A stretch of 64,000 nt of DNA from Heterodontus francisci (GCF_036365525.1 NC_090382.1:101924595-101988594); one strand, 5' to 3'. Shown: positions 30,760 through 64,000, numbered from the stretch's first letter. Translations and numbers: made by a program. The notes: generated by a model from the letters alone, not told the origin.

Positions 30760-30831
30760 TTATTTCTGATTTACTTGTGCAATTTGTGCAGAGATGACAG
30801 ATGAATCATCTTCCTTTGAATGAGCCGGGTT
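30760..30831 (-). CDS. Ig receptor terminal coding exon with degenerate ITIM (VISAQI)
   Basis: tttctctcttgtag|AAC CCG..., phase 0; NPAHSKEDDSSVISAQIAQVNQK*. Confidence 0.68.
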   Translation of the reverse strand, partial: NPAHSKEDDSSVISAQIAQVNQK

Positions 30832-33800
30832 CTACAAGAGAGAAATTAACCATTTATAATAATGTGAACTATTAATGCATCTCTTTACATCAAATACATC
30901 AGATCATGCAGCATGATCTGGACAACATTCAGGCTTGGGCTAAAAAGTGGCAAGTAACATTTGGGCAACACAAGTGCTAGGCAATGACCATCACCAAAAA
31001 AGAGAATCTAACCAGGTCCCCTTATCTTTCAATGGCATTATCTGGACCAGTCATATTAATACTGTGGCTACAAGAGCAGGTCAGAAGTTGGGAATTCTGC
31101 AGTGAGTAACTCACCTGCTGAGTCCCAAAATCCTGTCGACCATCTATCTACCAGGCACAAGTCAACAGTGTGCTGGAATACTCTCCACTTGCCTGGATGA
31201 GTACAGCTTAAACAACACTCAAGAAGCTCAACAGAATCCAAGACAAAGCAGCCTGTTTGTTTGGCACCCCATCCACCATCTTAAACATTCATTCCCTCCA
31301 CCTCTGGCGCACAGTGGCAGCAGTGTGTACTATCTAGAAGATGCACTGCAGCAACTCGCCAAGCCTCCTTCGACCACACCTTCCAAACCTGTGACCTCTA
31401 TCACCTAGAAGTACAAGGGCAACAGATGCATGGGAACACCACCACCTGCAAGTTTCCTCCAAGTCACACATCATCCTGACTTGGAACTATATTGCAGTTC
31501 CTTCACGGTCACTGGGTCAAAATCCTGGAACTCCCTTCCTAACAGCACTGTGCGTGTATCTACACCACATGGACTGCAGCTGTTCAAGAGGAAGCTCACC
31601 ACTACCTTCTCAAGGGCAATTATGAATGGGCAATATATATGGGCCTTGCCAGTGATGCTCACAAGTCATGAACGAGTAAAAAAAAACAACTTTACAAATT
31701 TGTTGCAGATATTAATATTGTATGGCGTGTGATTTCATCAGCTGGAATTGATGTACTTACAGTATCTGAAGATTGTTTATTGCGTTGAATACCATGTCTA
31801 TGCCCTGTAATAATTGCAAATATTACAATTAAAAGATAATATTGATAGATCAGACTGACAAAAAGTGACATGTAAATGTCCTCAGCTTACTGCATTTCAA
31901 ACAGAGAATGGATCGGCAAGACTTGGCAAGTCAGTGAACCAAGTTGTCCTCTGTAAGACTCAGATCCAAACGAAGCACTGCATTTACAGTGAACCATAGG
32001 GCTGGTCATAAATGAACTAAGCTCCCTGTAATACTCTGAGAGTGTGAGACTGTCATTGTCACTACAGTGTCAGAAAGCAAAGAAATTATAAACAGCAAGA
32101 GGCCATTTCATCCATTGCAGCTCGGCTGGGGTGAGTTGGTCATCTGCAGCTATCATTCTAACCCAATTTCCTGCCTTATCTCACTGACATTTTATCATAT
32201 TTATTTACTCTTTATCCTATATTACATGTTGGGCTTGACTCTCCTGGTCCTTCCAGGTGAAGCCGTGTCAAAGTGGAATCCGCCTATCCAGGCTTCAGAG
32301 TGTCTTAATACGTTTGGCCAGGCCATTAGCACGGTTTGAGTGAACGATTGTTGCAGGACTCTGGGAAACAAGCAGAGTATCAATCACATCACAGGGTTGA
32401 GAGGACTGGCAACAATGGGAAGGGCCACAGGTCTTGAGGCTTTCTGGCTGTTGACCAGCAGTCAGAGGCTTAGCTCAGGATTCCATGATTGTTGAGAGAT
32501 GACAGGACCCACTACTAGCTCACTCAGGTGCTTTTGGAAGTGGGTGCTCTTCAGATGAAAATACAGGAAAGTGAGGTTGGACCAAGCAGGAACTGCTTCT
32601 TCAGTCTTATTTTCATTGAAGCTTGGAAACAATTTTAAAGGAATGGAGGTCCTATGTCACAGATCACCATCCTTTTTTACCAAATGCTGCTCAAGCCATA
32701 GTCCCCAAAGGACCATAGGCATTTCTCCTCATTAGAGAGAGACAGATGGCAATGTACAGGTAGAGGGTCACCACTCCTCAAGCATGGGGCATGGTGAGGA
32801 GGTAGGCCTCCATGAACTACCACAGCCAGTACAGGGATTTAACCCACACTGTTGTTTTTTCTTTCTGCATCACGCTATAGCCATCTAGCCAACTGAGCTA
32901 ACCAACTTATTTTGGACTGCGAAAACCCGGCGAATACGTATTTCCTGGCTACTGTTGAAAAATTAGCTTTATTTATATCAATTCGAGAAGAATTTTCATA
33001 GTGTTTTTCACCTCCTCAGGTTCTCCCAAAGCAACTGAAACACATTGATCGTTTCGTCAACTGTTCCAGGGAATTAATGTCCATAAATGCAACATTCCCT
33101 CTGCAGCAAGCAGAGGTAAGCCTGAGCCAAGCTGGCAGTCTGAAGGCTGAAACATGTTTCCTTCGACATTACATGTGCAATATTTGATGTGATATGATTT
33201 AAGAATGTCAGAAGTTTTCCTTTTATTGTGGTTCCATATTGCTAATAACTTCAACATTAAGTTCAAAAATTGTCACAATAAATGCTCATCTTTCACGTCA
33301 CATTTTTTCCAGAAAAAAAGTTCCAATTGGAAAGATACTACCAATTCCATTAATAAAAATGCAATGTCACCAAGATTTATTGTCTGTGCAGGAGAATGCA
33401 CTTGTCATAAGGGCCCTAAATCATCCTACAATGTTTTTTACATTTGTTCTGAGGATGTGGATGATCCTGGTTCAGTCACATTTATTACCATCTCTGGTTA
33501 CCCTAAGAAGGCAATGGATATTCTTCTTGAAGCAATTATACACTTCAGAGAACAGTTAACCACAAAGTGTGGATTTCATTAATATTTGAATAAAGCTGAG
33601 GTGCCTCTTCTGTATTTTCCCCTCGTTGCAGAGGTTTCTGTCTTTGATTCCCTGAACCTATTCAGACAGAAATCGCCCATTAACACGTGTTCAGCTTTCC
33701 TTATAAGGAATGCAGTGTAGAATGATGCCTGGACTTCAAGGGTTAAATTACAAGGAGTGATCACACAGACTAGTGTTGTATTCCTTGGAATTTAGAAGGT

Positions 33801-36800
33801 TAAGGGGTGATTTGATAATTTGAGTGTAGTTTTAAAGATTTTAATGGGAATTGATTGGATAGAGAGAAACTATTCGCTGTGGTTGGGGAGTCTCAGACTC
33901 GGGGCATAGCCTAAAATTTAGAGTTTAAAATTTATATTAAGCTTTTGGCCGCCAGTCCAAATATCTCCATATAATATAAAAACAAGAAATGCTGGAACCA
34001 CTCAGCAGGTCTGGCAGATTCTGTGGAAAGAGAAGCAGAGTTAACGTTTCAGGTCAGTGATCCTTCTTCGGTCAGATTTGGGAATCATGTGCCACATTCA
34101 CATTTTATTACATGTATCAGACTTGAAATTGAACGCAGCAATTTACATATCTTACCTGCAACCTTGCACTTTCTTAGACTCAGTACCAGTGCCAGGATAA
34201 TGATGAGGAGAAGAGCCAGACTTCTAAAAATAGCAACATTGGTATGTTTGAAAGTGGAACGACCTGTCAGAAGAATAAGCACAGATTTCACATTTAGTTA
34301 ATAGATTAAGGGCTAGAAATTGGTTCGCTCTGAGTTGCGGGCAGAGGGGCCATGATGCATAACCTGCTGCAGTTGTTGGAAACGAGGTGGGCAGCATGTA
34401 AAATTTGTGCACTAAATCCCCCAATTTCCCTGACTGTAGCAAAGCCATGAGCAGCTCCCGTGCTGAACTGGTCTCCGTTGCACTGCCTGGACCATCTACG
34501 CACCGCAGGGAGACGAGTAGCATTCTGAAGAAACCACATGCTCCAGGCAGCCTTCCTTTTTTAAAAGCGCAGTCCCTATAAAAGGGAAGTCGCAGAAATG
34601 CACTGCAGGCTCCTGGATAACTACTCTGAAGCACTCAGAGAGAAGGAAAATGGTGCACGACATCAAAGAAGGGGCTCCTTGCTTTAGTGACGCCACTCTG
34701 GATGCACTGGTTAGAAAGGTGAAGGCCAGGAAGGAAGCTGTGTTTCCACTGAGAGGCAGGCAGCTTTCACAATTGACCTTCGGTAGGGAATGGGATTATG
34801 TGACAATGGCAGTTAATGCCCAGAGTGTGACGCCCAGGACATGGCAACAGTGACGAAAGAAGTTTAATAACCTCATTTGGATAGTTAAGGTGCGTGAATG
34901 CATCTGCACGTCTGAGTTCACACCCACCACACTACCCACAACACAATCCACATCTCACGGTGATCAACACACCCCACCCCCAATACTCCTGCAGCAACAC
35001 GCCCTGACACTGAGAACGCACCGCTCTCATCCTTACACTAACCTCACCCACACATGTCTTCCAATCATGCCAGCCACATACACACCTGTACAAGCCTCCA
35101 CAAACCTACAGCTATTCAGCTATAGCAGGCAGCTCACCCAAACACAGTGACACACAGTCACTGACATTCTACCCTCTCTTTTGTAGGAGAAGGTCACCAA
35201 CAACAGGTAGGAGACTCACAGGACTGGCAGATGACCAGCACAGAATTATTGGGACCAATGCCATGAAGCCAGTGACACTCAGCGCTGCCAAGGCCATTGA
35301 TGATGATGATGATGCTGCCTTATGCACCTTTTCCGCTGACTCCTGCTATGAAATGGAAATTGCAAACTGTGAACCTCCTGCTTTCCTCCCAACCCTCCCC
35401 TCCCCTTCTGCTTTTGTGCTTTGAGATTATCAAGAATTACCACCTGGTCAGTCAATGCAGCCTCATGAGGAAGGGCCAGAGCAACAGCTGACCTCTGAAG
35501 AAGAAGCAACATCACTTGAGGATGTAACTAGTGGGATGGATAAGGGGGAAGCAATGTGTATTTGGATTTCAGTTTCTCCCTATTTACTCTGTCCAGACCA
35601 CTCATAATTTTGAATACCTCTGTCAAATCTACTCTCAACCTTCTCTTCTCTAAGGAGAACAGTCCCATCTTTGCCAATCTATCCAAATAACTGAAGTTTC
35701 TCATCCCTGGAACTATTCCTATAAACCTGTCCTGCACCCTCTCCAAGGCCTTCACATGCTTCTTACAGTGTGGTGCCCAGAATTGGACACAATACTCCAT
35801 TTGCAGCTGAACCAGTGATTTATAAATGTTCACCATAACTTCCTTGCTTTTGTGCTGGTGTTGACCAAGATTGTGTCATCGCATCAACATTCTTCTCCAT
35901 CTTCCTCACTGCAATTTTGCACCTCACCTCCAGCAAGCCCGCCACAGGAGCAGTGATAACTTACAGGATGGACAGGAAATTATTCAACCTCCGTCACCTC
36001 CACTCCAAAATCAAAGCTCACACTAAGCTCAGTCATTGAGCTTCAGTATGCGGACGATGTTTGTGTATGTGCTCACTCAGAGACTGAGCTGCAAGTCATC
36101 ATTGACTCCTTCACTGAAGCATACGAGAGGATGGGTCGTACTTTAAACATCCAGAAGACTGAGGTCCTCTTCCAACCCACTCCCACAGTACAGCATCATC
36201 CCCCACCAACTAGGATCCACAGTGAAACCCAGTAAATGTGGACCAATTTCTCCAGAGTCTCCCCTCAACGAAGGCAGACATAGATGAGGAAGTCCACCAG
36301 CACCTTTAGTGTGCCAGCTCTGCTATTGGCTGACTGAGGAAGAAAGTATTTGAGACCTCAAACCCAGGACGAAGGTCGTGACATATTGGGTAGCAGCGAT
36401 CCCTGTGCTCCTATATGTTTCTGATACAATCTATAGCAGCTATCTCCAGGCACTGGAGAAATCTCATCAACGCTGTCTCCACAAGATCCTTCACATGCGT
36501 TGGTAGGAGAGGCGGTCTAATGTCAGTACCCTCTCCCAAGACAACATTCCCAGCATCGAGGTGCTCATCACCCAAAACCTGCTTCGCTGGGCGGGTCACG
36601 TCACTCACATGTCTAACACCAGGTTCCCAAAGCAACTGTTCGACTCTGAGCTTTGCCGCAGCAAAAGACTCCCAGGAGAACAGTGGAAACACTTTAGGGA
36701 CGTTCTCAAAGCATTCCTGAAGAAATCCAACATACCCACCAAATCACAGGTGTCCCTGCCCCTCAACTGGATGGCACAGTGGCGCAGTGGTTAGCACCGC

Positions 36801-42800: not shown

Positions 42801-45800
42801 CAAAGATTCCTTACGGAAGTATAATGGACCTAAAAGACTTTTTTTTGCATTTATTCATTTTCAATCCTCTCCGTAGCTTCGAGCTGTTTCGTTTGACTTT
42901 TTGATGTTTATATATGCAGACCTATCCTGTGAACTCTTAATAATGTGGAGTGCAACAGAATAAGAAGTTATCATAATTAAAGAGTATTAAGTGACCAGAA
43001 TTGTCTTTGAAAATGACAAGCAAAATCTGAGAGACTTACTGTTAAACTTCAGATAATATGGAATTAAAACCTTGGGTGTGTTTTGATGAAATAAAACACA
43101 GGTCCAGTTCTCTCTGTCTCTATCGGTTTTCTGAATAATCAGCTGTAAAACATCCTCTTCCTGTTTTTGTTCCTTCAATGTTTTCTCTGCAACAGTTTTG
43201 CCATCACTACTGATCCAAACAAGTCTCATTGATTCAGTGACATCAGAGACAGAGCAGGTCAGGGTAACAGTGTCTCCCTCAGTCACTGCATCAGGTGGTT
43301 CAGTTGTGACTGTGGAAACAAGAAAATCATTTAGATTTTAAACAATAACATGATCATTTAAAACCATGGGAACATTCTGTCTCCTACCTTTAACTGTGAT
43401 TAGTTTGATGGTCACAAAATTATATGATCCCAGAGAACATGTGTAAATTCCTGAATCTTCAAACAATACAGGGACAATCTGCACATTGAAGTTGTTGCCA
43501 TTAAAGTTTGTTTCGGTGGGCACCAGTCGACTCCCAAAGTAGGTCCTGTTTATATTGATAGGCTCAGATCTGTAAGTAGAAGCTATTTCTTCTTTTTGAT
43601 TCTGAAAATAACGTGATGACCAGGTCCATTTAGTTTCAGTGTAATCAGATTGAACTTCACAACTTAGGTAGAGTTCACTGTGATCCGTGACTGACCGATA
43701 AAGTGTGTATATTTTGTTGTGTAACTCTGCAATAGACAGACAGGAAACAAGATGTTAGATTTTTATAGTTCCTGAGATACAGATGTTGTAAATTTCCACA
43801 GGACCAAACAGCGTCCTCCTGGTATGTCAGCTGGGAGTGCAGCATTAGGACAGGGAAATCGGCTGGGACCTGGATACACTGGCTGCTGGCCCAGGCTGAT
43901 AGTTCTTTAAATGTCAGGTTGCAAGTCCATCTGCCTTAAATATGGCTCAGTCAAAGTGATATTTCTCCATGGACAGTAGATTTGTTAAACTGTCTCAGCA
44001 ATTAATTATCAACAAATGCCTCATTCCCATTGTATTGGTACATCTGGTCCCATTGTGAATAGGAGGTCAAATAGAGACGGAATCATTGATGGCCTGAATG
44101 GTCTCCTTCTATGCTATTATGACTCGATGACTCTATGACATCGGCAGGTCCATCAAAGAGTGCAATGTCAGTCTAGCTTGATAGAGAAAGGAGCAAGGGG
44201 AAGCTTTGACTAATTTCTGAACTCCAGCAGGTCGGAGGTTCATTCGGAGTTAATTTGTTTAGGTTAATTAGTTGACCCACTGGTTTGGAACAGTGAGGCA
44301 TGTTCATTATTTTGAACTTATGCACAAATACAGGTAATACTGATTAAACTAAGTGAATCCGATCATAACTGTTATTCTGTATGTTCCCTTGCTGTGAAAT
44401 AAAGCACTTAAACTGACTTTGTCTCACCAAGGATTTTTTAGGCTGTCTTCAAAAAATACTAAAGATGCATGTGCGATAGACACAAATATCCAGTTTAGAT
44501 CACAGGGGAATCTTATTCTTACACCCCAGGCTGTGCCATCACATAATCAGTCATTGGGCAGTATGAGATTAACCCTGAATGTAAGATGCTCAGACCATTT
44601 TAGTGAGTGACCAGCACCACTGTACCCAAGAGAATGTTTCAGGAATGACCCTAATCTTTTAACATCAGTGTTGGGTGCCTTTAATTTGTTTGTATTTCTC
44701 TATTCCAATGTCGACTGGAAAGGCATTTCCTTTATTCAATTGATGGATTTTATTCTTTTTGATTCACAAACATGAATTGAAATGAATCCATTGAATTCAC
44801 CTGATTGGTTACATCAGTTCTTAATGTCCCCATTTTATATTTACACCCATGTTCCAGGGTAAAAACAAGGACCACATTCTGCAGTAAATCCCACAGTGGT
44901 TTCTGTGCTCACTGTACTTTGTGTGTAACAGTTTTATATTAGTTATTATTTAATACTGCAAGGTAGCTCTGGACTTACCCAGATCCACATCAACATTTGT
45001 GTTTCCACTGAGAACAATGGAGTCATTTTCATGCACTTCCCATGTATATAAATTCTGATTCTCTGCTCCAACTTGTCTGACTATCAGATAGACTGTGTTA
45101 TTCAGATGGATCTCATCAGTGTTGTTCCTCCTGTTCTGCTGAGATGAGTCTCTTGGTTTCCAGTGAAGACTGACTGTATCTGAGAGTTTGGAGATGGTAC
45201 AGCTGAGGGTGATGTCACTGCCTATTCCAGGCCTCTGTGAATCTGTCTCAACTGTAAAAAACAGATAAATGAAGCTTAGAATTCTCAATAAGTGTTCTGA
45301 ACTATTGCATTCAGAACTTTCTTTTTTTTACAAAGACACAGTGGTGGGAATTTTATTTCAATGTGAGGGTGGGAACGGGGCGGATGGTCATTTAACCCAC
45401 CCCCCGTATGGGCATGCTGTCTTCCCGACACAAAACCAACACACTCAATGTTTAAAAAGCTCCACCAAGAGCCGGAGGAGACAATCCGCCCGAGATCGAT
45501 GATTGGTCACTTAGACCTCTTAGCGAGCTTGTTGTTTGTTGTTTGTTGACCATTTTGAATTTTCTTTGTAGGCTCAGGATCCACACAGGGTCTCAAACCA
45601 CAACAGGGAGGAGAAGTTGCAAACACAATGGAGAGACAACAGCAAGAGGCACCATTAAAGAGAGAAGGCTCAGAAAAGGCCCTCATTCACAGGCAGTCAG
45701 TTTTATAGAGACAGGAGAATTATCTGTCCTGTTACTTCGCTCTTGACAAGGACATTGGGTGGGAGGCGATTGCTTTAGAGGGTGTGGACGGTCCCTTCTG

Positions 45801-51800: not shown

Positions 51801-54800
51801 ACCTCCAGACAGGCCTTCTCAGTCATCCTTGTCGGCTTCTTCTGGTGCAGACATGGAATGCGATGCTTCTCTGGGCCGTCACCAGCACCAGAAGTACCTC
51901 AAGTAAGGCACGCGAAAAACAGAGGGTTACCCTGGCACGCGGGCCCTCCCTACACACTGCCCTCTGCTCAGCTTCTCCTTGCAACATGGAGATGAACAGT
52001 GACCACATCAATGGCTGCCGCTCATCGTTTAAATCAGGCCTGCTCATCCCTGTGTCCCGCCTCATTCCTGCGTCCGCCGCTGCTAATTTGGTGGCGAATG
52101 TGATGCCAGGCTAATTAACTGGCTTTCCAGTTAAAACTGCAACATGTGCACATTGCCAATGCGGTGCAGGGTCGGGACCCGGAAATAAACGCGATGTTGA
52201 GGTCCTGACCCCGGAATTGAAATCCCACAAAGTCAGAGAAATACTGAGCAGCTGTGCTTAGTGCTGACAATTAACATTTCCCAGATAATGTTCACTTGTT
52301 GCCATTAGCCCCCTCCTGTTAATTCTGTATCTATTGTTTAGTGTTATGCAGGTGGAGGGTGTTAACTGGGGTCTTACTTCAACGCTTCTGAGGAGAGTCT
52401 TACTGAGACAAGTGAAGGAGTTGAGTGAGGAGCGACATGTTTGTACTCCTTTTACTCTGTACGATAAATGTGAAACTGAGTAAAGATTGGCTCTCGCATT
52501 ATCCTTCAACAACAACCTCCTCCCTCCTCTTCCTCCTGTACATCTGATCCATGGCAGTATCATTCAAAGACGTATATTCACATGCAAATTCCTGACACCC
52601 AAATCTATCTCTACACTATCTCTCTCACACCTTCCATTGCCTCTGTGTTGTCTGATTGCTTATCCAACATCATGTCTTGGATGAGCCACAATTTCCTCCA
52701 GTTCAAGATCTGGAAGACTAAAGTCATCATCTTCGGCTCTTACCAGCAACTCCATACTGTCACCATCAGCTCCATCACCCTCCATGGCCATTGTCTCAGG
52801 AATTTTACGAGAATGGACAAAAGATTGGGAAAAAATACAAATGTTACCAATCAAAACTACTCACCCTTTGTGCATCCACTAATTCTAATGCACAGAGGAT
52901 TTTCACTGATCTGTCTGTTTCCAGTGAGAGATTCATTCTGGGCTGGGTGATAGAACTGAAGGATCATGACATGATCCCAACATTCTGTTAGGAATATTAG
53001 TGGAATTGCTCACAGAAAATCATATTATTGAACCCTTTCTAGTCCTTGTCCTACTTACCTTTGATCCCAAATACTTCAAACTGTTTCAGGATTTTTTTAC
53101 TGGGTTGTGTCTGAGTCCAGGTGAACAAGCCCGCAAGTTCAAAGGTGGGCTTTCTGATTCTCAGATTAAGGGTACCCCAGTCCTCACGTATCCTCTGAGA
53201 AATGCCTGGTATATTATTGTACTTATCGCTCCATTGTACAGCCCATCGCTGATCTTCGCTGTGAAAGGTACCCAATTGATATGTAGTTTGTTGCCCTGAG
53301 TGTGGTCTCCATTCCAACACAATGGGACCATTTCCAGGATTTTCTGGTCCTTTCAATACAAAGTTCCCTTCCTGATGTAAAAAATAAATATAACTTGGGA
53401 ATCCTGCAAGGAAAGAATAACAAACATTTTAGAATCAGACAGCAAATTTTTAATCTGACCTGTGTAATTATTCATCCTGTAGACAATTTGTTTTCAGTAA
53501 ATTGTTATTGATGATACAGTTCAGACATGCTACAGCACATACACACCAGAGTAAAATGCTGTATAGCTGAAAGAGCAAAGGTCACCTTCCTAAAGATACA
53601 CTTATTAGAATGGATTGTGATTTCTCCCAGCTCCCAAAGTTTAAAAAAAAAGAATTCCCCCACATTTATATAGCAATTTTAATAGAAAATAACTTTACAA
53701 CACTTTACAAACTGTGGAAAAATATAAAAGGATTTAGAGAGAATAAACACAACAACTTGAAATGTACCGCATCATTAACATGTTAAAATGCCTCATGCTG
53801 CTTCCCAGGAGTGTTATCACTCAAAACCTGAAACCGAGTGACATCGAGAGATATTAGCGCAGACGAACTAAAGCTGATCAAAGAAGTCGGTTTTACAGAG
53901 GGTCTTAAAGGGCAAAAACTAGGTAAAGAGGCAGAGAAGTTTAGAGAGGGAATTCTAGAGCTCAGGGTTTCGGCAGCTGAAAGCACAGCCACCAATGGTG
54001 GAGCAATTTAAATCGGGGCAGTTCAAGAGGCCGGAATTAGATGTGAGCAGATCAAGCGGACGGTTGTGGGGCAGGTGGAGATTAATTAGAAAGGGAGCAG
54101 CAAAGCTATGGAGACATTTGAAAACTTTAATATCAAGGTGCTGCTTAACCTGTAGCCAGATCAATGAGCACAGGGGTGATTGGATGAACGGCATTTGTTG
54201 TGAGTTAGGACACAGGCAGCAGAGTTTGGATGGCCTGAAGTTTACAAAGGGAAGAATGTGGAAGGCCGATCAGGAGTGCATTGGAATAGACAAGTCTATG
54301 AGGTAGCAAAGGCTTTCATGAGGGTTTCAGCAGCAGATGAGATGAGGCAAGGACAGCGTCAGGTGATGTTCCGGAAGATGAAAAGACCATCTTAGTGATG
54401 GTGTGGATGTGTAGGCGGCAGCTCAGCTCAGGGTCAAATATGAAACCAAAGTTGCAAAGAGTCTGCTTCAGCGTCAGACAGTTGCCAGGGAGATAGATGG
54501 AGTTGGTACCTATGGAATGGAGTTTGTTGCGGGACCAAAGACAATGACCAGTACTGGATGTTGGACAAGAAGTCTGATAACTTAACAACCATGAAGGAGT
54601 CAAGATTTATAGTCGTAAGATAGAGCTGGGTGAAAAACTGAGTTTTCGGATAATGGCGCCAAAGGGCTGTACGTTGATGAGAAATAGAAGGGGGGGGGGG
54701 GGTCAAGGATAAATCCTTTGGGGACACAGGAGGTAAAGGTACGGGAGTGGGATAGGAAGCCACTGCTGATGATACCCAGGCTCTGATTAGATCAATAAGA

Positions 54801-57800: not shown

Positions 57801-60800
57801 TTTCTCAGTTTCTAAAAGTACACAGAATTCTTAGCTTTCATCTTCAGACCTCTCGTCTCACTGTCTTCATTGTGATCTTTGATAACAAATGCAAACCCTA
57901 ACCCAAAATCAAGGCAGCCTCTGCCTCCTGTGCTCACTCACGTCCCCCATCTTACACGCTTCTTTGTAATCCAAGGAGTAGATGAGGAAGACATTTGTTG
58001 ATCTCCAAAGGGTTACTAAGGTAAGTGGGTTCACACTTTGCCTTCATTTACAATCTTAACCTTCGAATGTGGATGATCAGCCTTCACTGCAAACTTGATG
58101 GAGCATCAAGGTGGGAAAATCAGACAACTTTTCACACACTTTCCAAATGCATATTAACATTGTAAAATCTAGCAGACTGTCAGCACAAGATATTCTGTAG
58201 ACTGCTTGTTCACACATTCATGTAAGCAGGATGCTTGGCTTGGCTCTAGAGTAATATTGTCTCTGCTTCTCCCAATTCTAACTGATGTGGCTTTTATAAC
58301 TGCTTACAGGAGGCTGCACGTGCGAACAGATTTGTATCTGAAGGGGACCTCCCAACCACTGCTCACTGACTCTGAGTAAATTCAGCAATTCTGTGCTTCC
58401 AGTAACAGCATAACGGGAAGAAGGAAAATCATTTGATCTGAAACCCCGTGAACATTTTTATCCTTCCCATGATCTGCCTGTGGATTTCCCAAGTGAGCTA
58501 ATTTACAGATATTATAATGAGTGCTCATGGCTCTGCAGCCTCGCGTTCCCTGCTTTTGTAAAAAAAGAAAGATTTGCATTTATATCGCACCTTTCATTAC
58601 CACTGGATGTCTCAATGCACTTTACAGTCAACAAAGCACAAATGAAGTTTAGTACTGTAGGAAACGTGGCAGCCAAATTGCGCACAGCAAGCTCCCACAG
58701 ATGACAATGTGATAATGACCAGATGATCTGTTTTTGTGATGTTGATTGTTTGATAAATACTGGCCGGAATACTGTGGATAGCCCACTTGCTCTTCTTCGA
58801 AATAGTGCTATGGGATCTTTTACGTCCACCTGAGAGGGCAGACTGGGCCTTGGTTTGACATCTCATCTGAAAGACAGCGCCTCTGACAGTGCAGCTCTCC
58901 CTCAGTATTGGACTGGGGTGTCAGCCTTGATTTTTGTGCTCAAGTTGTAGTGTGTGTTACACTCACAATACACGAGCCTTCAGTTAGAATGAGAGTTATG
59001 AGGTACAGATGTTTCTGTTGGGTTGTTGGGTTTGTATTAGTCATGATGTAGAGCATTCTAGAGAAAGTCTTAGACTCAGGTAAACGTTCACTGACAATTC
59101 TTTATCATTTACAGTTACTATATATATTCACCATAAGCCACATAAGATAACATCTTTCGTGCTGCTATACCTTCTTCTTCTCAAGCTTATCTCCTGTGAA
59201 TTACATCATCACTCGAACAATGGGAAGGATCTCTCTCACTGTCTTTGGTATTAACCCTTTACATCCTTATACTACAGTGTCCAGGATCAGCTGAGGCAGA
59301 CAGAGAGGTTTCTCAGAATGAAGAATGGAGACTTCCAATTCCAATGTTTGCAGCTGGCAATTATTTTTTACTGTGGTTATTTTGGGCATTTTGTCTTGGA
59401 ATTCTGATTTTATTTTTATTTGTTTCATGTGATGTGGGTGTCGCTGGCTAGCGCAGCATTCATTGCCCATCCCTAATTGCCCTTGAGAAGGTGGTGCTGA
59501 GCTGCCTTCTTGAACTGCTGCAGTCCTTGTAGTTACACCAACAGTGCTGTTAAGAAGGGAGTTCAGGATTTTGACCCAGCGATAGTGAAGAATGGAGATA
59601 TAGTTCCAAGTCAGGATAATGCAGGTGCTGGTGTTCCCATGCATCTGCTGCCCTTGACCTCTTAGGTGGTAGAGGTCGCGGGTTTGGAAGGTGCTGTCGA
59701 AGGAGCTTTGGTGAGTAGCTGCAGTGCACCTTGCAGATGGTACACACTACTGCCACTGTGCGTTGGTGGTGGAGCTCATGAAGGTTGAAGATGATGGATC
59801 TGGTGCCAATCAAGGGAGCTGCTTTGTCCTGGATGGTGTTGAGCTTCTTGAGTGTTGTTGGAGCTGCAGCCTTCCAGGCAAGTGGAGAGTATTCCATCAC
59901 ACTCCTGACTTGTGCCTTGTAGCTGGTGGACAGGCTTTGGGGAGTCAGGAGGTGAGTTACTCACCACAGGATTTCTAGCATCTGACCTGCTCTTGTCGCC
60001 AGAGTATTTATGCAGCTGGTCCAGTTCAGCTTCTGGCCAATGGAACTCCCAGGAAGTTGATAGTGGGGGATTCAGCAGTGATAATCAAGGGGACATGGTT
60101 TTCTCTTGTTTGAGACAGTCATCGCTTCGCTTGGCACTTGTGTGGTGCAAATGTTACTTGCCATTTATTAGCCCAAGCGTGGAGGTTGTCCAGGTATTGC
60201 TGCATATGGACATGGGCTGTTTCAGCATCTGAGGACTTGTGAATGGTGCTGAACATTGTGCAATCATAAGTGAACATCCCTACTCCTGACCTTATGATGA
60301 AGGGAAGGTGATTTATGAAGCAGTTGAAGATGGTTGGACCTCGGACACTGCCCTGAGGAATTCCTGCAATGATGTCCTGCAATGGAGATGATTGACGTCC
60401 AAAAACCACAACCATCTTCCTTTGTGCTAGGTATGATTCCAACCAGCAGCATGTTTTCCCTCGGATTCCCATTTCCTCCATTTTTATGGTCAGAAAAGAA
60501 TGGAACTGGTTCCATTTTTCTGTCAAACATAAATGCTTGCTCTGTCTCAGTGAGTTTACCAACAGTCCAGTTGAGAAATACAGACCAGGAATTTCATAGC
60601 TCGCTCCAGGCTGCGCTGAATTATCTCAGGGTCAATTTTCTGAGGCTCTTTCCCACTGTAGAACCTCACACACAGGATATAAAGGAAGGCCTTAACTCCG
60701 GCAACAGGAATAATCAATGGTGACAGAACATAAAGAGCAAACCCTGAGGCACTTACCACTCGGCTCCTGATAATATGGGACTAAAACCTGGGGCCTGTTT

Positions 60801-63454
60801 TGATATAACAAAGCACATATCCAGTTCTCTTTGCCTCTGTCAGCTTTCTGAATAATCAGTCTCAATGATTTCTCTTCCCCATTCCATCCATTCAATGGTT
60901 TTTCTTCAACAGTTTTGCCATCACTGTTAATCCAAACAAGTCTCATTGATTCAGTGACATCAGAGACAGAGCAGGTCAGGGTAACAGTGTCTCCCTCAGT
61001 CACTGCATCAGGTGGTTCAGCTGTGACTGTGGAAACAAGAAAATCATTTAGATTTTAAACAATAACATGATCATTGAAAACCATGGAAACATTCTGTCTC
61101 CTACCTTTAACTGTGATTAGTTTAATGGTCACATATTTATTTGATCCCAGAGAACATGTGTAAATTCCTGAATCTTCAAACAATACAGGGACAATCCTCA
61201 CATTGAAGTTCTTGCCATTAAAATTTGCCATTGTGAGAACCAGTCGACTCCTGAAGTAAGTCCTGTTTATATTGATGAGCTGAGATTTCCCTGCATTTGC
61301 TATTTGATTCTCCTGATTTTGACGATGATGTGACCTCCAGCTCCATGCAGCAGAGTTGTAAGAGTAAACAGAATAAAAATAACAAATCAGGTTGAGTTCA
61401 CTGTGATCTGTGCCTGACCGATAAATTGTGTAACTCTTCCCATATAAATCTGTGGCAGAAAGACAGAGAACAATGTGTTAGAATTTTACAATAACTGACG
61501 TGAAGAGAAAAGCCAGAATAATGAATGGCCTTAACTATATGACATTATTTTGTGCTTTGATCATCATAACTTCGTTTCATCAAGTTTTTGTCAAAGCTAT
61601 GAATTGTTTAAACATTGAAAACTTCATTGAATTCAATACCCAAAAGCAACAACATTTTGTGAAAATAAAATCTTTTTGTGTTTTAATTTGACATTGTCTT
61701 TGAGCCAGGAATGACACCATGACATCACATACCCAATATTGTGAGGCTCGGTCAGTAACATGGAGCCCTGCTGCTGGTGGCGGCGACTGCAGCTTTGCCC
61801 ATACACAGTTTCCCTCAGCCAAGTGCAATCCATATTTATATCTCACCCATGTAAAATGGGTATATGCCTGCTCCATGGGCCTGACCCACTTTCACACAAT
61901 CCATAAAACATGGTCGCTGCTGTTTGAGTTGGGGAAACTTGTAGGTTTTTTCACACTTGACACGGTCGCCTCTTACATCTAATATTTTGTACAGTCTTTA
62001 TACCTCTGCACTTTCTACATGTTATTTCTTTATCTCTATTTCTACTAAGGCTTCTGAATCTCCTCAGCCAGACTAACCCAGAGTCAGTTTAATTGCTGCT
62101 GAAATACAACTTCACAGCTGACAAAATTGGAAGGTTGGAAATCTTTCCTTATTGTCCAGGGAACAATCATGATGCTTTCTGACAGAAACATGGGGTAATT
62201 TGTCTTTGTGCGATAGTGTAAATGGGTAATAATAAATTGGCAGCACATTTCACAGAGATGACTCACTATTGCACATGGTTAAAGTTTCCTGTCTGCTATT
62301 CTCCAGAAAGCCTGCTGTTGAAGGATGATGCTGGAGCCCATCTTTACTCAGTCTTGCATTAATTTTACAAAGAAAAATGATTACAAACATGCAGCTCCTC
62401 ACTCAAACCTTCACCCAGTTTCAGTCAGTATCTCCTTATATATACACTCAGGTAAGGCCCTAATTAACACCCTCCACATGCATATGATTAAACACAATTA
62501 ACACACATTCAGTCCCACACTAAATCCGACTCGCCCAACCTCAATGACATACACAGGCTCTCTGACCCTCACAATCAAATTTAAAATCCTCATCATCATT
62601 GACAAATCACTCCACAGCCTCACGCCAATTTATCCCAGCAACTTCCTGCAAGATAATCTCCTTTCACATTCACTGTCTTCCTCTCACTGTCCCCTCTCTC
62701 TATTCAACCATTGATGGCAAAAAACCTTCTGTTTCCTCAGCCTGAACCTCTGGTACTCCCTCCCTAAACCCCCTCCACTCAGTTTTTCCCCCTCTTCCTC
62801 ATCCAAAGCCCCACTCCCAGCCTCTGTCATTTCCCACTGCCACCATCTCTCCTCTACATTCCCATTATTTTCATCCTCCCCTCTCCCATCCATGGACATT
62901 GATTCCCTGCCCTTCCCTCTTCCCTTAGTCCTGCTCCCAGCTCTGTGCTAATTTGAAGGTGAGAGTGTGCAGCAGCTGGAATCACTTCAAATAACAGCAG
63001 AACTCGGTTGGATGTGGCATTGAGGGGAGAGAGGCAAGTTATTTGTTCAATGTTGATATGTGCACCAGATCATCACATGTTGACTCAAAGCATGAAGTGC
63101 TGATAATTGACTGTAACCCACTCTATACATAACAGTTTTATATTAGTAACACTTTAATATTCACTGTTAGGAAACTTAACTTACATTGAGTCACAGAAAA
63201 ATCTGCTTTTCCTGTGAAAATAATAGAACCATTTTCCTGCACTTCACAAACATACGACTTCTCATCCTTAACTGCAACATGTTTGATTATCAGATAGACT
63301 GTGTTATTTAGTTGGATCTGATCAGTTTTCCTCCTGTTCTGCTCAGATGTGTCTCTCTGTTTCCAATGAAGACTGACTGTATCTGAGAGTTTGGAGATGG
63401 TACAGCTGAGAGTAACATCACTGCCCACCTCAGGCTGCTGTGAACTTGACTCAA
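30760..63454 (-). CDS. Multi-exon gene, 5' incomplete: type I membrane receptor with at least 7 alternating C2/V Ig-like domains (CD4/LAG-3-like WxC motifs), TM segment with Arg, and cytoplasmic Tyr motifs
   Basis: Eight exons (63185-63454, 61105-61449, 60757-61026, 53059-53403, 44979-45251, 43388-43726, 43040-43309, 34156-34263) have canonical AG/GT sites, lengths divisible by 3 and phase 1-1 boundaries, and join into one stop-free frame of 2220 nt. Tail exons lie at 33545-33657, 31761-31804 and 30760-30831. Confidence 0.88.
30900..31690 (+). mobile_element. LINE 3' fragment, same family as 18225-19880, in the last intron of the Ig receptor gene
   Basis: Direct similarity to 19050-19880. 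Confidence 0.8.
31761..31804 (-). CDS. Ig receptor penultimate cytoplasmic exon
   Basis: tattacag|GGCAT...TACT|gtaagt, 44 nt, phase 1 to 0; (G)HRHGIQRNKQSSDT; phase fits the terminal exon. Confidence 0.65.
33545..33657 (-). CDS. Ig receptor cytoplasmic exon 1 with Tyr motif QLYSNI; reads through to a stop
   Basis: gtctgaatag|GTTCAGG in phase with the TM exon; GSGNQRQKPLQRGENTEEAPQLYSNINEIHTLWLTVL*; no phase-1 GT donor seen; minus-strand AATAAA at 33481-33486. Confidence 0.7.
34156..34263 (-). CDS. Ig receptor transmembrane exon
   Basis: ttctgacag|GTCG...GCAG|gtaaga, 108 nt; SRSTFKHTNVAIFRSLALLLIIILALVLSLRKCKVA, a hydrophobic helix followed by basic RKCK; Arg codon at 34223-34225. Confidence 0.88.
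34310..35520 (+). mobile_element. PIF/Harbinger-derived fragment with Myb/SANT-like pseudo-exon
   Basis: TAA|GGGCTAGAAATT end; APCFSDATLDALVRKVKARKEAVF...W..V..AVNAQSVTPRTWQQ*RKKFNNL at 34650-34889. Confidence 0.7.
35858..37352 (+). mobile_element. Old degenerate RTE LINE fragment interrupted by a SINE
   Basis: YADD, LRWAGHV and CPTCGRVCSSPIGPISHVRAH remnants. Confidence 0.75.
36769..37089 (+). mobile_element. HE1-like tRNA-derived V-SINE
   Basis: A-box TGGCGCAGTGG, B-box GGTTCAGTTC, V-domain GGGTGCTCCGGTTTCCTCCCACA and CR1-type tail. Confidence 0.85.
37438..38060 (+). mobile_element. CR1 3' fragment
   Basis: Degenerate EYCV.FWAP...LGLFSLEKR; CR1 3' end. Confidence 0.8.
38988..39972 (+). 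mobile_element. Solo LTR (985 bp) inserted in a CR1 fragment
   Basis: TGTGAC...ATAACA ends; 4-bp TSD GCAG at 38984-38987 and 39973-39976; internal AATAAA near 39772. Confidence 0.85.
40378..41190 (+). mobile_element. CR1 3' fragment nested in an older CR1
   Basis: ORF 40579-40941 LVRPHLEYCVQFWSP; TTCTTATG tail. Confidence 0.85.
41971..42687. mobile_element. Non-autonomous Harbinger-like MITE
   Basis: TIRs GGGCTGAATTTTCA / TGAAAATTCAACGCC; TAA/TAT flanks. Confidence 0.6.
43040..43309 (-). CDS. Ig receptor exon C2, membrane-proximal C2 domain with WxC, paralog of C1
   Basis: ttccacag|TCACA...AACA|gtaagt, 270 nt; VTTEPPDAVTEGDTVTLTCSVSDVTESMRLVWISSDGK...ENWTCVLFHQNTPKVLIPYYLKFN. Confidence 0.92.
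43388..43726 (-). CDS. Ig receptor exon B2, V-set domain, paralog of B1
   Basis: ctattgcag|AGTTA...AAAG|gtagga, 339 nt; ELHNKIYTLYRSVTDHSELYLSCEVQSDYTETKWTWSSRY...FEDSGIYTCSLGSYNFVTIKLITVK. Confidence 0.92.
44979..45251 (-). CDS. Ig receptor exon A2, paralog of A1 with F-strand Cys replaced by Trp
   Basis: ttttttacag|TTGAG...CTGG|gtaagt, 273 nt; VETDSQRPGIGSDITLSCTISKLSDTVSLHWKPRDSS...NLYTWEVHENDSIVLSGNTNVDVDL. Confidence 0.9.
46087..46862 (+). pseudogene. Harbinger DDE transposase (HARBI1-like) pseudogene
   Basis: FPQVQGIFDCLH, FLNRKGFHSRNIQLVC, YPGSCHEAFIL, WLLADKPFP, HLSTRVITEQVIGLMKMMFRCL; stops and frameshifts. Confidence 0.85.
48990..51635 (-). mobile_element. Gypsy LTR retrotransposon internal relic (gag-PR-RT-RH)
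   Basis: Zn knuckle CSNCKKMNHF, IDTGS protease, PFGRYRWLHVPFG and VDDLL RT, SDHKPL RNase H. Confidence 0.85.
53059..53403 (-). CDS. Ig receptor exon D, cysteine-less V-like domain
   Basis: ttccttgcag|GATTC...AAAG|gtaagt, 345 nt, in frame between C1 and A2; GFPSYIYFLHQEGNFVLKGPENPGNGPIVLEWRPHSG...LNLRIRKPTFELAGLFTWTQTQPSKKILKQFEVFGIK. Confidence 0.82.
53780..56070 (-). mobile_element. Degenerate L2 LINE
   Basis: PTSCSLDPI, NYCPITNLPFLFKVLE, DKGKLSVLILL; SDHFLV endonuclease remnant. Confidence 0.8.
56100..57067 (-). mobile_element. Solo LTR
   Basis: Reverse-complement similarity to 8240-8440; boundaries approximate. Confidence 0.55.
57072..57766. mobile_element. Non-autonomous Harbinger-like MITE
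   Basis: TIRs GAGTTGAATTTT / AAAATTCAGCCC; 3-bp flanks CGA/CAA. Confidence 0.65.
58565..58945 (-). mobile_element. SacSINE1-like DeuSINE
   Basis: Homologous to 21634-22090 and 28863-29290. Confidence 0.7.
58946..59276. mobile_element. Probable short solo LTR
   Basis: TGTAGT...ACTACA inverted termini; no clean TSD. Confidence 0.4.
59410..60475 (-). mobile_element. LINE 3' fragment, same family as 18225-19880
   Basis: GIPQGSVRGP, FTYD and MEYSPLAW remnants. Confidence 0.8.
60757..61026 (-). CDS. Ig receptor exon C1, C2 domain with WxC
   Basis: tttccacag|TCACAG...AGTG|gtaagt, 270 nt; VTAEPPDAVTEGDTVTLTCSVSDVTESMRLVWINSDGK...ENWICALLYQNRPQVLVPYYQEPS. Confidence 0.92.
61105..61449 (-). CDS. 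Ig receptor exon B1, V-set domain (not in ORF track)
   Basis: ctgccacag|ATTTA...AAAG|gtagga, 345 nt; YLYGKSYTIYRSGTDHSELNLICYFYSVYSYNSAAWSWRSHH...YFRSRLVLTMANFNGKNFNVRIVPVLFEDSGIYTCSLGSNKYVTIKLITVK with DSGxYxC. Confidence 0.92.
63185..63454 (-). CDS. Ig receptor exon A1, C2-like domain
   Basis: ttttccacag|TTGAG...CAAT|gtaagt, 270 nt; VESSSQQPEVGSDVTLSCTISKLSDTVSLHWKQ...KSYVCEVQENGSIIFTGKADFSVTQ with B-strand Cys, C-strand Trp and YxC. Confidence 0.9.
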
Positions 63455-64000
63455 CTGTGGAAAACAGATCAATGAGATTTAGCGTAAGTCGTGACATGTA
63501 CAATCTAATGATTAGGTTCAAACTGACCTGAGGATGTGCCCATCATCAACACTTGTACCTCGCTGCAGTAAAGACTCCCGTCAGATTATACACAACTGCA
63601 TCTTATCAGTAAAATAGCACAGTGGAGATAAAAAAAAATTCTCCATTCTCCTCCACCTGCTGGAGTGTCAAGGGTCAAGTCAAGCTTACATAGATTGGAT
63701 GGTATTTGTGGATGCCTGTACAACAATGGACAGGTGGTAGAAACTCACTGGAAGTGGGTGTGATGAAAATGAAAATGCAGTCCCCGTGTTATCTGACATG
63801 GGGAAGGCTCCAGTCCTACCCTGTACTCAATCGGAATAGAACATTTCTGTAGGACCACCCAAAACATGCACTGGGAGCCTGTGCAGAAAATCGAGAGCAA
63901 ACGTCTTCACAGCCTGAGGAGTTATTTAAATTAGTAGGTTTCTAAAATGCTCTTGAGCAGGTCTCCAACCATTGAGCTTCCATGAGGAATGGCACTTCAG

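What the first reader, a model, noticed from the sequence alone, without database searches (positions are those of the whole stretch)
30760..63454. Shark multi-Ig receptor with CD4/LAG-3-like domain signatures and at least 7 domains
Seen: seven phase-1 Ig exons plus a TM exon splice into one open frame across about 30 kb of transposon debris, alternating C2 and V domains. Two C2 domains have WxC in the F strand (ENWIC, ENWTC). The run B1-C1-D-A2 reads V with disulfide, C2 with WxC, V without Cys, C2. Established: V-C2-V-C2 order and WxC in the C2 domains characterise the CD4/LAG-3 family, and human CD4 D3 lacks the disulfide. However, CD4 and LAG-3 have four domains and a D1 split by an intron, and CD4 has a Cx(C/H) Lck-binding motif; none of those three traits is seen here. 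Inference: a distinct, expanded, possibly uncharacterised chondrichthyan receptor family related to CD4/LAG-3.
Basis: partly seen in the sequence, partly recalled or inferred. Interest (0 to 1): 0.9.

Follow-up and report, generated by a model that had tools for sequence, protein, structure and literature searches.

The report
Shark eight-Ig CD4/LAG-3-like receptor gene
This is a real shark gene for a long surface receptor made of a doubled four-domain unit shaped like CD4 and LAG-3; it belongs to a large, old family of paired inhibitory and activating fish receptors that databases list only as "uncharacterized".

Summary
On the minus strand, seven immunoglobulin exons (A1-B1-C1-D-A2-B2-C2) have AG/GT borders and are all phase 1. 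They are followed by a transmembrane exon and tail exons ending at 30760. A horn-shark protein model (P0160) follows the same exon order and is 91-100% identical exon by exon. Spliced RNA contigs show the A1-B1, B1-C1 and C1-D joins, plus a D-type exon spliced in front of A1. That exon lies outside the window, so the gene has eight domains.

It is not CD4 or LAG-3. It belongs to a tandem multigene family found in sharks, rays, chimaera, sturgeon, eels and tarpon. The family unit is D-A-B-C: a Cys-less V, a C2, a V, and a C2 with WxC. Members come as ITIM-tailed forms or as short-tailed forms with a transmembrane lysine.

The CD4/LAG-3 likeness passes several tests. LAG-3 is the best PDB match to the family profile, and CD4 is the best structural match (Z 18). 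No CD4 or LAG-3 tail motif is present.

This copy's tail looks decayed, and its own expression is not shown.

The scan had already found this family on neighbouring DNA (s1-872036).

The parts
63185..63454 (-). Exon A1: short C2/I-type Ig domain (YVC), phase 1/1. Not the first exon of the gene.
   Evidence: Read directly. Pfam Ig_3, ig and I-set. 91% identical to P0160 residues 144-232. RNA contigs cover it and join it to B1; loose ends at 63455 are 3' ends of D-type exons.
61105..61449 (-). Exon B1: V-set domain with the canonical disulfide (…DSGIYTC), phase 1/1.
   Evidence: 99% identical to P0160 residues 234-347. RNA joints at 61449 and 61105.
60757..61026 (-). Exon C1: C2 domain with WxC (ENWIC), phase 1/1, preceded by a 78-nt intron.
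   Evidence: 100% identical to P0160 residues 349-437. The 78-nt intron is skipped in all four RNA runs. The loose end at 60756 reads the start of exon D.
53059..53403 (-). Exon D: Cys-less V-type domain, which starts the second four-domain unit; phase 1/1.
   Evidence: No Pfam or PDB sequence hit. V-set-like in the ESM Atlas. 99% identical to P0160 residues 439-552 and 80-86% to the internal D of 8-domain orthologues. The equivalent domain folds as a 9-strand V domain in the model.
44979..45251 (-). Exon A2: C2/I-type domain whose F-strand Cys is replaced by Trp (LYTWEV), phase 1/1.
   Evidence: 97% identical to P0160 residues 554-643. The YxW state is shared by 8-domain orthologues in lamniform, hexanchiform and carcharhiniform sharks and a sawfish.
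43388..43726 (-). Exon B2: V-set domain, phase 1/1.
   Evidence: 99% identical to P0160 residues 645-756.
43040..43309 (-). Exon C2: C2 domain with WxC (ENWTC), phase 1/1, preceded by a 78-nt intron.
   Evidence: 99% identical to P0160 residues 758-846.
34156..34263 (-). Stalk and transmembrane exon (…TFKHTNVAIFRSLALLLIIILALVLSLRKCKVA) of the inhibitory-type lineage. It has Arg where relatives have Gly.
   Evidence: Matches the TM of P0160, P0070 and P0096. P0160 reads …YLKFN-S-RSTFKHTN across the C2-to-TM junction, as predicted.
33545..33657 (-). First tail exon (NQRQKPLQRGENTEEAPQLYSNINEI…). TT stands where orthologues have the GT donor, and read-through reaches a stop at 33545-33547.
   Evidence: 62-69% identical to the orthologue tails.
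31761..31885 (-). Degenerate remnant of the ITIM exon (EDIYMSLFV, about 31850-31885), followed by the intact small exon GHRHGIQRNKQSSDT (31761-31804).
   Evidence: the 15-residue exon is 100% identical to P0160.
30760..30831 (-). Last coding exon (NPAHSKEDDSSVISAQIAQVNQK, then stop). The family's terminal ITIM SVIYAQI has Ser in place of Tyr.

Best explanation
The window holds most of one gene for a type I membrane receptor. Its ectodomain is two tandem copies of a four-domain unit D-A-B-C: a Cys-less V, a C2, a V, and a C2 with WxC. The leader and the first D exon lie beyond the window's end. The gene belongs to the eight-domain, inhibitory-type lineage of a large, unnamed, tandemly clustered family found in cartilaginous fish and basal ray-finned fish. 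Among characterised proteins, the unit's closest relatives are LAG-3 and CD4, so the unit probably forms two stiff V-C2 rods, as in CD4. Intact members would signal through tail ITIMs that recruit SH2 phosphatases. Sister members with a transmembrane lysine and a short tail would signal through a DAP12- or FcR-gamma-type adaptor. Both signalling steps are inferred from motifs, and the ligand is unknown. This copy is 99% identical in most exons to the gene model P0160 but has a decayed tail, so it is either a recent duplicate or a divergent allele that has lost inhibitory signalling. Shown here: the exon structure, splicing of this gene type, family membership, and the ranking of LAG-3 and CD4 as nearest solved proteins. 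Inferred: the signalling, common descent with CD4/LAG-3, and the functional state of this copy.
For: Exons and phases were read directly.

P0160 is colinear with all the exons at 91-100% identity.

RNA coverage is exon-only. It shows joints A1>B1 and B1>C1, a loose end C1>D and loose ends D0>A1.

Family: 67 representatives by HMMER and about 200 proteins in all, in sharks, rays, skates, Callorhinchus, sturgeon, eels and tarpon, all unnamed. Architectures are DABC, DABCDABC and longer. Inhibitory forms have a TM such as 'HTNVVIFGSLALLLIIIL' with ITIMs IHYGSI and VIYAQI. Activating forms have a TM such as 'GYLLVKLAVALGL'.

WxC is present in 207 of 214 C domains. No Cys is present in 131 of 182 D domains. 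A domains read YxC (116) or YxW (53).

The four-domain profile hits LAG-3 first (E 3e-13), in two stretches that align to D1end-D2 and D3end-D4 with WxC matched. CD4 ranks 8th. With the B-C-only profile the top four hits are all LAG-3.

The AF2 model of P0070 has ectodomain pLDDT of about 85-95 and continuous strands D>A (123-138) and B>C (329-344). By Foldseek, LAG-3 and CD4 take ranks 2-8. By VIA-align, four-domain CD4 scores Z 15.8-18.0 over 312-330 residues and the next entry scores 14.2. Rat CD4 D3D4 scores Z 13.4 at 2.5 A over 170 of 177 residues.
Against: The sequence signal to LAG-3 and CD4 sits only in the B-C half. The D-A profile finds only generic light-chain hits. Structurally, D resembles the Cys-less V domains of SLAM/CD2-family proteins (NTB-A Z 13.6, CD48 Z 12.0).

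At the two-domain level CAR and JAML score about as well as CD4, and CEA nearly ties LAG-3 in summed profile score.

WxC is absent from the D2-equivalent domain. No Cx(C/H) or (F/Y)xxL(D/E) tail motif is present. Pfam gives only generic Ig families. Synteny with CD4/LAG3 was not tested.

At every site that tells this copy from P0160, the RNA contigs carry the P0160 letters, so transcription of this copy is not shown. Its tail is damaged.
Confidence: 0.78

Rival explanations
1. The family is an ordinary IgSF paired-receptor family, closer to CEACAM, CD2/SLAM or CAR/JAM-type molecules. Its likeness to CD4/LAG-3 would then be architectural or convergent (V-C2-V-C2 order plus a chance WxC), with no special common descent.
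For: CEA scores E 2e-12, next to LAG-3. NCBI's pipeline named single members 'CEACAM5-like', 'VCAM1-like', 'CD276 homolog' and 'obscurin-like'. The D domain is best matched by SLAM/CD2-family V domains, which also lack the disulfide. CAR and JAML reach Z 13-14 on B-C. The tails carry classical ITIMs as in CEACAM1, not the CD4 or LAG-3 motifs.
Against: The CEA score is a sum of six weak domain matches, the best at 17 bits. LAG-3 has two 21-27-bit matches that run across the V-to-C2 junction with WxC aligned. All four top hits of the B-C profile are LAG-3. Only CD4 and LAG-3 align over all four domains, and CD4 stands 2-4 Z units above the rest. WxC is 97% conserved in the family, and PMC10768021 calls it 'very unusual' and typical of CD4/LAG-3.
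Confidence: 0.3
2. This particular copy is a pseudogene, or a non-signalling remnant of a recent duplication. The Ig exons are still open only because the duplication is young.
For: Compared with P0160, which is 99% identical in B1-C2, the copy differs in several ways: TM G>R; the first tail exon has TT in place of the GT donor and then a stop; one tail exon is not found; the ITIM exon is degenerate; the terminal ITIM has Y>S. No RNA contig carries this copy's own letters at the discriminating sites.
Against: All seven Ig exons, the TM exon and all their splice sites are intact. A contig spanning C1 and 157 nt of the adjacent intron matches the window without a mismatch. Contigs drop rare variants, so absence proves nothing. 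A tail-less or Arg-TM form could be a working decoy or an adaptor-coupled receptor.
Confidence: 0.4
3. The exons belong to two or more tandem genes, for example …A1-B1-C1 and D-A2-B2-C2-TM, rather than one long gene.
For: About 7 kb of transposon-filled sequence separates C1 from D and D from A2. Four-domain D-A-B-C genes are common in the family.
Against: RNA contigs run from the C1 donor at 60757 straight into the first 30 letters of exon D. P0160 and the orthologues P0090, P0092, P0095 and P0098 are continuous across C-D-A'. No leader, TM or tail exon lies between C1 and D. D begins in phase 1 and so needs an upstream coding exon.
Confidence: 0.03

Closest known systems
LAG-3 (CD223)
   Same: It is the best sequence match of the family profile in the whole PDB. 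The end of B plus C aligns to both D1end-D2 and D3end-D4 with WxC matched. It shares the V-C2-V-C2 unit and an inhibitory role of the tail in intact family members. Shark LAG-3 also has an unsplit D1 exon (PMC10768021).
   Different: LAG-3 is a single-copy gene with four domains, WxC in both D2 and D4, and an (F/Y)xxL(D/E) tail motif. Here there is a tandem multigene family with 4 to about 16 domains, WxC only in the fourth domain of each unit, classical ITIMs, and activating TM-lysine partners. Identity is only about 17%.
CD4
   Same: It is the best structural match. All four domains are colinear (Z 15.8-18.0). B-C superposes on rat CD4 D3D4 at 2.5 A. V G-strands run on into C2 A-strands. One V domain lacks the disulfide.
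   Different: There is no Cx(C/H) LCK motif. The Cys-less V is the first domain of the unit, not the third. The D2-equivalent has YxC or YxW. The unit is doubled in this gene. The genes are many and clustered, not one.
Paired Ig receptor families (KIR, LILR, CEACAM, fish LITR/NITR)
   Same: The logic is the same: near-identical ectodomains joined either to ITIM tails or to a TM with a basic residue and a short tail, in tandem clusters with fast copy turnover and decaying copies.
   Different: The domain types differ. Those families use C2/I or single V domains, not a CD4-like V-C2-V-C2 rod. No specific sequence kinship was found.
Lamprey 'CD4-like' and teleost CD4-2
   Same: These are V-C2 modules with WxC in the C2 domain. 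Zebrafish CD4-2.2 also duplicated a V-C2 pair (PMC10768021).
   Different: I did not compare them here, because no sequences were at hand. They are single genes without ITIM/TM-lysine pairing.

Membership tests
CD4/LAG-3 family | Ectodomain of four Ig-like domains in V-C2-V-C2 order | tested here: met
   The family unit D-A-B-C folds as V (9 strands), C2, V, C2 in the AF2 model. It aligns over all four CD4 domains. This gene carries the unit twice, which no CD4 or LAG-3 does.
CD4/LAG-3 family | [quoted passage not shown] | tested here: met
   ENWIC and ENWTC are in the window. WxC is present in 207 of 214 C domains. It aligns to the LAG-3 D2 and D4 WxC.
CD4/LAG-3 family | [quoted passage not shown] | tested here: not met
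   The A domains read YxC (116) or YxW (53), never WxC. A1 reads YVC and A2 reads YTW.
CD4/LAG-3 family | Continuous beta-strand from the V domain G strand into the C2 domain A strand | tested here: met
   Single strands span residues 123-138 (D>A) and 329-344 (B>C) in the model of P0070. This rests on a prediction, not on a solved structure.
CD4/LAG-3 family | Specific sequence similarity to CD4 or LAG-3 above other IgSF proteins | tested here: inconclusive
   LAG-3 is the top PDB hit (E 3e-13 and 4e-12) and CD4 ranks 8-9. The margins over CEA and MXRA8 are modest, and the D-A half gives no such signal.
CD4/LAG-3 family | Tail motif: Cx(C/H) for CD4 or (F/Y)xxL(D/E) for LAG-3 | tested here: not met
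   The window tail starts RKCKVA and has neither motif. In 197 family proteins, Cx(C/H) occurs in 3 and the LAG-3-type motif in 6, while 118 have classical ITIMs.
CD4/LAG-3 family | Location in the conserved CD4-LAG3 gene neighbourhood, with one gene each | not testable with these tools
Many tandem copies exist (adjacent LOC numbers; neighbouring notes), which already differs from the one-gene rule.
CD4/LAG-3 family | Intron inside the D1 exon | tested here: not met
   The D and B exons are unsplit. However, shark CD4 and LAG-3 also lack this intron (PMC10768021), so it does not discriminate in sharks.
Unnamed D-A-B-C fish receptor family (e.g. XP_038652085, XP_067852155) | Colinear D-A-B-C domain order with high identity to members | tested here: met
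   Per-exon identity is 91-100% to P0160 and 70-89% to orthologues in other shark orders.
Paired inhibitory/activating Ig receptors (functional kind) | Cytoplasmic ITIM(s) in the inhibitory form | tested here: not met
   The ITIMs are present in the sister P0160 and in orthologues (IHYGSV, VIYAQI). In this copy the motifs read DIYMSL and VISAQI, and the first tail exon has lost its donor.
Paired inhibitory/activating Ig receptors (functional kind) | Sister genes with a charged TM residue and a short tail | tested here: met
   Many members have TM '…GYLLVKLAVALGL…' and tails of 10-45 residues. Pairing with an adaptor was not tested.

The most novel reading that the evidence does not exclude
The D-A-B-C family is the surviving polygenic sister or ancestor lineage of CD4 and LAG-3. 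It would be a paired inhibitory/activating receptor system of fishes that reads MHC class II or MHC-like ligands with CD4-type rods. The two single-copy T-cell molecules of all jawed vertebrates would be specialised offshoots of it.
Probability: 0.15. Interest if true: 0.9.

Novelty: new variant of a known kind. Interest (0 to 1): 0.62.

Why it matters
CD4 and LAG-3 have been treated as an isolated pair whose origin is obscure; the only proposed outside relative is a disputed lamprey V-C2 molecule. A large, old family with the same four-domain rod, the rare WxC motif and LAG-3 as its nearest characterised relative changes that picture. Because it is organised as paired ITIM and TM-lysine receptors, it gives an outgroup for tracing how the co-receptor and the checkpoint arose. 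It also points to an unstudied innate-type receptor system in sharks, rays and basal ray-finned fish. For genome annotation, about 200 'uncharacterized' models can now be read as one family with a defined unit. For this locus, the comparison with its 99%-identical sister shows receptor turnover in progress: loss of both ITIMs and gain of a TM arginine.

Tried and rejected
1. Single-exon searches of the PDB sequences gave only generic or weak hits: B found MXRA8 and pIgR, A found lambda light chains, C1 found PD-1 and KIT with LAG-3 at E 0.07, and D found nothing. They could not classify the gene, and family profiles were needed.

2. Pfam gave only generic Ig families for the exons and for 36 family members. 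There were no CD4-specific models beyond one weak C2-set hit.

3. I first took the hydrophobic frame at 31.8 kb for a possible TM exon. Comparison with orthologue tails showed it is a degenerate ITIM-exon remnant plus a small cytoplasmic exon. The real TM exon is at 34.2 kb.

4. The reading as two genes was rejected (see rivals).

5. The D-A-only profile gave no CD4/LAG-3 signal.

6. Literature searches for a description of the family found none. The nurse-shark entry 'obscurin-like protein' V9NJF3 is a member, but no open paper on it turned up.

So the locus of P0160, the allele-versus-paralogue question and synteny could not be examined.

Full report
**Observation**

The Ig exons lie on the minus strand. 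Stop-to-stop frames and tblastn within the window show a three-exon module present twice. A1/A2 are 54-60% identical, B1/B2 66% and C1/C2 71%. A single further exon, D, lies between the two modules.

Reading the DNA gives AG acceptors and GT donors with phase 1 at both ends of every exon:

| Exon | Coordinates | Note |
|---|---|---|
| A1 | 63454-63185 | YVC |
| B1 | 61449-61105 | V-set, DSGIYTC |
| C1 | 61026-60757 | ENWIC; 78-nt intron before it |
| D | 53403-53059 | no Cys |
| A2 | 45251-44979 | YTW in place of YVC |
| B2 | 43726-43388 | V-set |
| C2 | 43309-43040 | ENWTC; 78-nt intron before it |

Pfam calls A, B and C Ig domains, with B as V-set. D has no Pfam or PDB sequence match, but a language-model search places it next to V-set clusters.

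A phase-1 exon at 34263-34156 encodes a stalk and a transmembrane helix. The last coding exon ends with a stop at 30760.

**Independent support for the gene model**

An HMMER search of 1.8 billion representatives with the B1+B2 profile found 67 proteins. Word-based searches with two of them brought the total to about 200.

One of these, P0160, is an NCBI model from Heterodontus francisci of 965 aa. It runs through A1, B1, C1, D, A2, B2, C2 and the TM exon in exactly this order. It carries the residue predicted by each split codon at every junction. Identity per exon is 91, 99, 100, 99, 97, 99 and 99%.

Four runs of one sample behave as RNA when laid on 60600-63600:
- Depth is confined to the exons.
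- The 78-nt intron is skipped (61105>61026).
- B1 is joined at 61449 to the end of A1.
- A loose end after 60757 reads the first 30 letters of exon D, with one mismatch.
- Loose ends in front of 63454 read the 3' ends of D-type exons (…LKWYEIFGLN, …LKLYDIFGIK).

So the gene continues upstream of the window with at least a D exon and a leader. By homology it has eight domains, D-A-B-C-D'-A'-B'-C'.

One caveat applies. At every site that tells the window from P0160, the contigs carry the P0160 letters. These sites are 61359-61360, nine sites in A1 and the first codons of D. The RNA therefore proves the splice pattern of this gene type, not transcription of this very copy. The junctions D>A2, A2>B2, B2>C2 and C2>TM rest on P0160 and on orthologues, not on RNA laid here.

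**What family it is**

All relatives are named 'uncharacterized' or 'hypothetical'. A few carry automatic labels such as CEACAM5-like, VCAM1-like, CD276 homolog or obscurin-like.

They occur in sharks of several orders, rays, skates, sawfish and the chimaera Callorhinchus. More distant members occur in sturgeons, eels and tarpon. In several species the gene numbers (LOC) are consecutive, and neighbouring windows of this genome hold further copies, so the genes sit in tandem clusters.

Mapping the four exon types onto each protein gives one unit, D-A-B-C, directly after the signal peptide. The unit is present once (about 430-590 aa), twice (about 850-1030 aa) or more often. Scyliorhinus canicula XP_038652085 has 15 domains.

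Two tail types recur:
- A TM like HTNVVIFGSLALLLIIIL with a tail of about 120 residues and two or three ITIMs (IHYGSI, VIYAQI).
- A TM with a central lysine (GYLLVKLAVALGL) and a short tail.

This is the signature of paired inhibitory and activating receptors.

Across the retrieved proteins:
- WxC occurs in 207 of 214 C domains.
- D has no Cys in 131 of 182 cases.
- A reads YxC (116) or YxW (53).

The YxW state of A2 and the sequence of the internal D are shared with eight-domain orthologues in Heptranchias, Cetorhinus, Carcharodon and the sawfish Pristis, at 80-89% identity. A1 and A2 within the window are only 54-60% alike. The doubling of the unit therefore predates the shark-ray split.

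**Relation to CD4 and LAG-3**

- **Sequence profile, four-domain members.** A profile of 36 four-domain members was searched against all 177,635 distinct PDB sequences. LAG-3 came first (E 3e-13). There are two separate matches, in which the F-G part of B plus all of C aligns to D1end-D2 and to D3end-D4. The family's WxC falls on LAG-3's WxC, and the alignment runs through the V-to-C2 junction without a linker. CD4 is eighth.
- **Sequence profile, B-C-only members.** LAG-3 takes the first four places.
- **Fold prediction.** An AlphaFold2 model of the Heptranchias member P0070, made without templates, has ectodomain pLDDT of about 85-95. It shows V, C2, V, C2 folds and two long strands that pass from the V domain into the following C2 domain. 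PMC10768021 describes this as typical of CD4 and LAG-3.
- **Foldseek.** LAG-3 and CD4 take ranks 2-8 of 350,542 chains.
- **VIA-align.** The four-domain CD4 structures lead with Z 15.8-18.0 over 312-330 residues, and the next entry scores 14.2. B-C superposes on rat CD4 D3D4 at 2.5 A over 170 of 177 residues.

Several points weigh against a simple filing:
- The D-A half has no CD4/LAG-3 sequence signal.
- D looks structurally like the Cys-less V domains of SLAM/CD2-family proteins.
- CAR and JAML score like CD4 at the two-domain level.
- CEA nearly ties in summed score.
- WxC is missing from the D2-equivalent domain.
- The tails carry classical ITIMs rather than Cx(C/H) or (F/Y)xxL(D/E).
- Synteny could not be tested.

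According to PMC10768021, shark CD4 and LAG-3 also lack that intron.

My reading is that this is a distinct family whose nearest characterised relatives are LAG-3 and CD4. I put special common descent at about 55-60%. It is certainly not an orthologue of either.

**State of this copy**

Set beside P0160 and other orthologues, this copy differs as follows:
- The TM has Gly>Arg and Val>Ala.
- The first tail exon (from 33657) has TT where the others have the GT donor, and runs into a stop at 33545-33547.
- One tail exon (EDNETLV…KAKE) is not found.
- The ITIM exon survives as a degenerate remnant (EDIYMSLFV).
- The small exon 31804-31761 is intact.
- The terminal ITIM reads SVISAQI instead of SVIYAQI.

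With 99-100% identity in B1-C2 but 91% in A1, the copy is either a very recent duplicate with a converted or diverged A1, or a divergent allele. A low-depth contig that covers C1 plus 157 nt of intron matches the window perfectly. That fits either reading.

**Limits**

The joined protein was not built or submitted, and relatives returned by the tools stood in for it.

The species name (horn shark) rests on the near-identity to H. francisci models and on another agent's note. The run names were coded.

The scan had already met this family in the adjacent windows (s1-872036, followed up; also s1-872561 and s1-872338). I reached the same reading independently before seeing that note.

Noticed in passing
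window 30760-34263 (minus strand): Compared with the 99%-identical sister protein P0160, this copy's signalling end looks decayed. The changes are TM Gly>Arg, loss of the GT donor of the first tail exon (TT at 33559-33558, stop at 33545-33547), one tail exon missing, the ITIM exon degenerate (about 31850-31885), and the terminal ITIM Tyr>Ser (30760-30831).
   Followed up: partly
window 61359-61360, 63185-63379 and exon D start (about 53385): RNA contigs of the only holder sample carry the P0160-type letters, not the window's, at every discriminating site. A1 differs by 9 of about 266 nt, B1 by 2 of 345 and C1 by 0 of 270. This uneven divergence could mean gene conversion or a mosaic allele.
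   Followed up: partly
window 63455 (RNA loose ends): At least three different D-exon 3' ends (LKWYEIFGLN, LKLYDIFGIK, LKLYEIFGIK) are spliced onto A-type exon starts. Several family members that share the first letters of exon A are therefore expressed in the same sample.
   Followed up: no
window 33566-33600; family tails: A conserved membrane-proximal tyrosine motif LYSN(I/V/A) (a Grb2-type YxN) is kept in this copy and in 36 of 197 family tails, upstream of the ITIMs.
   Followed up: no
window 9670-12876 (minus strand): There is an open 1069-aa LINE ORF2 with endonuclease and reverse-transcriptase domains. It looks intact and so possibly young.
   Followed up: partly
window 46572-46859 (+), 49010-49420 (-), 60122-60625 (-): The introns hold a Harbinger-type DDE transposase fragment, an LTR-element RNase H fragment and a LINE RT fragment. 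A small piece at about 62320-62420 also draws RNA contigs and is probably an expressed repeat.
   Followed up: partly
protein P0182 (UniProt V9NJF3, nurse shark 'obscurin-like protein'): An eight-domain member of this family was deposited years ago under a misleading name. Its tail ends differently (…RKCMGARKQGKFMFGKSKIEALATRGKCRRYISALFKY) and resembles the alternative frame of the window's first tail exon region (33582-33791: …ATRGKYRRGTSALFKY).
   Followed up: no
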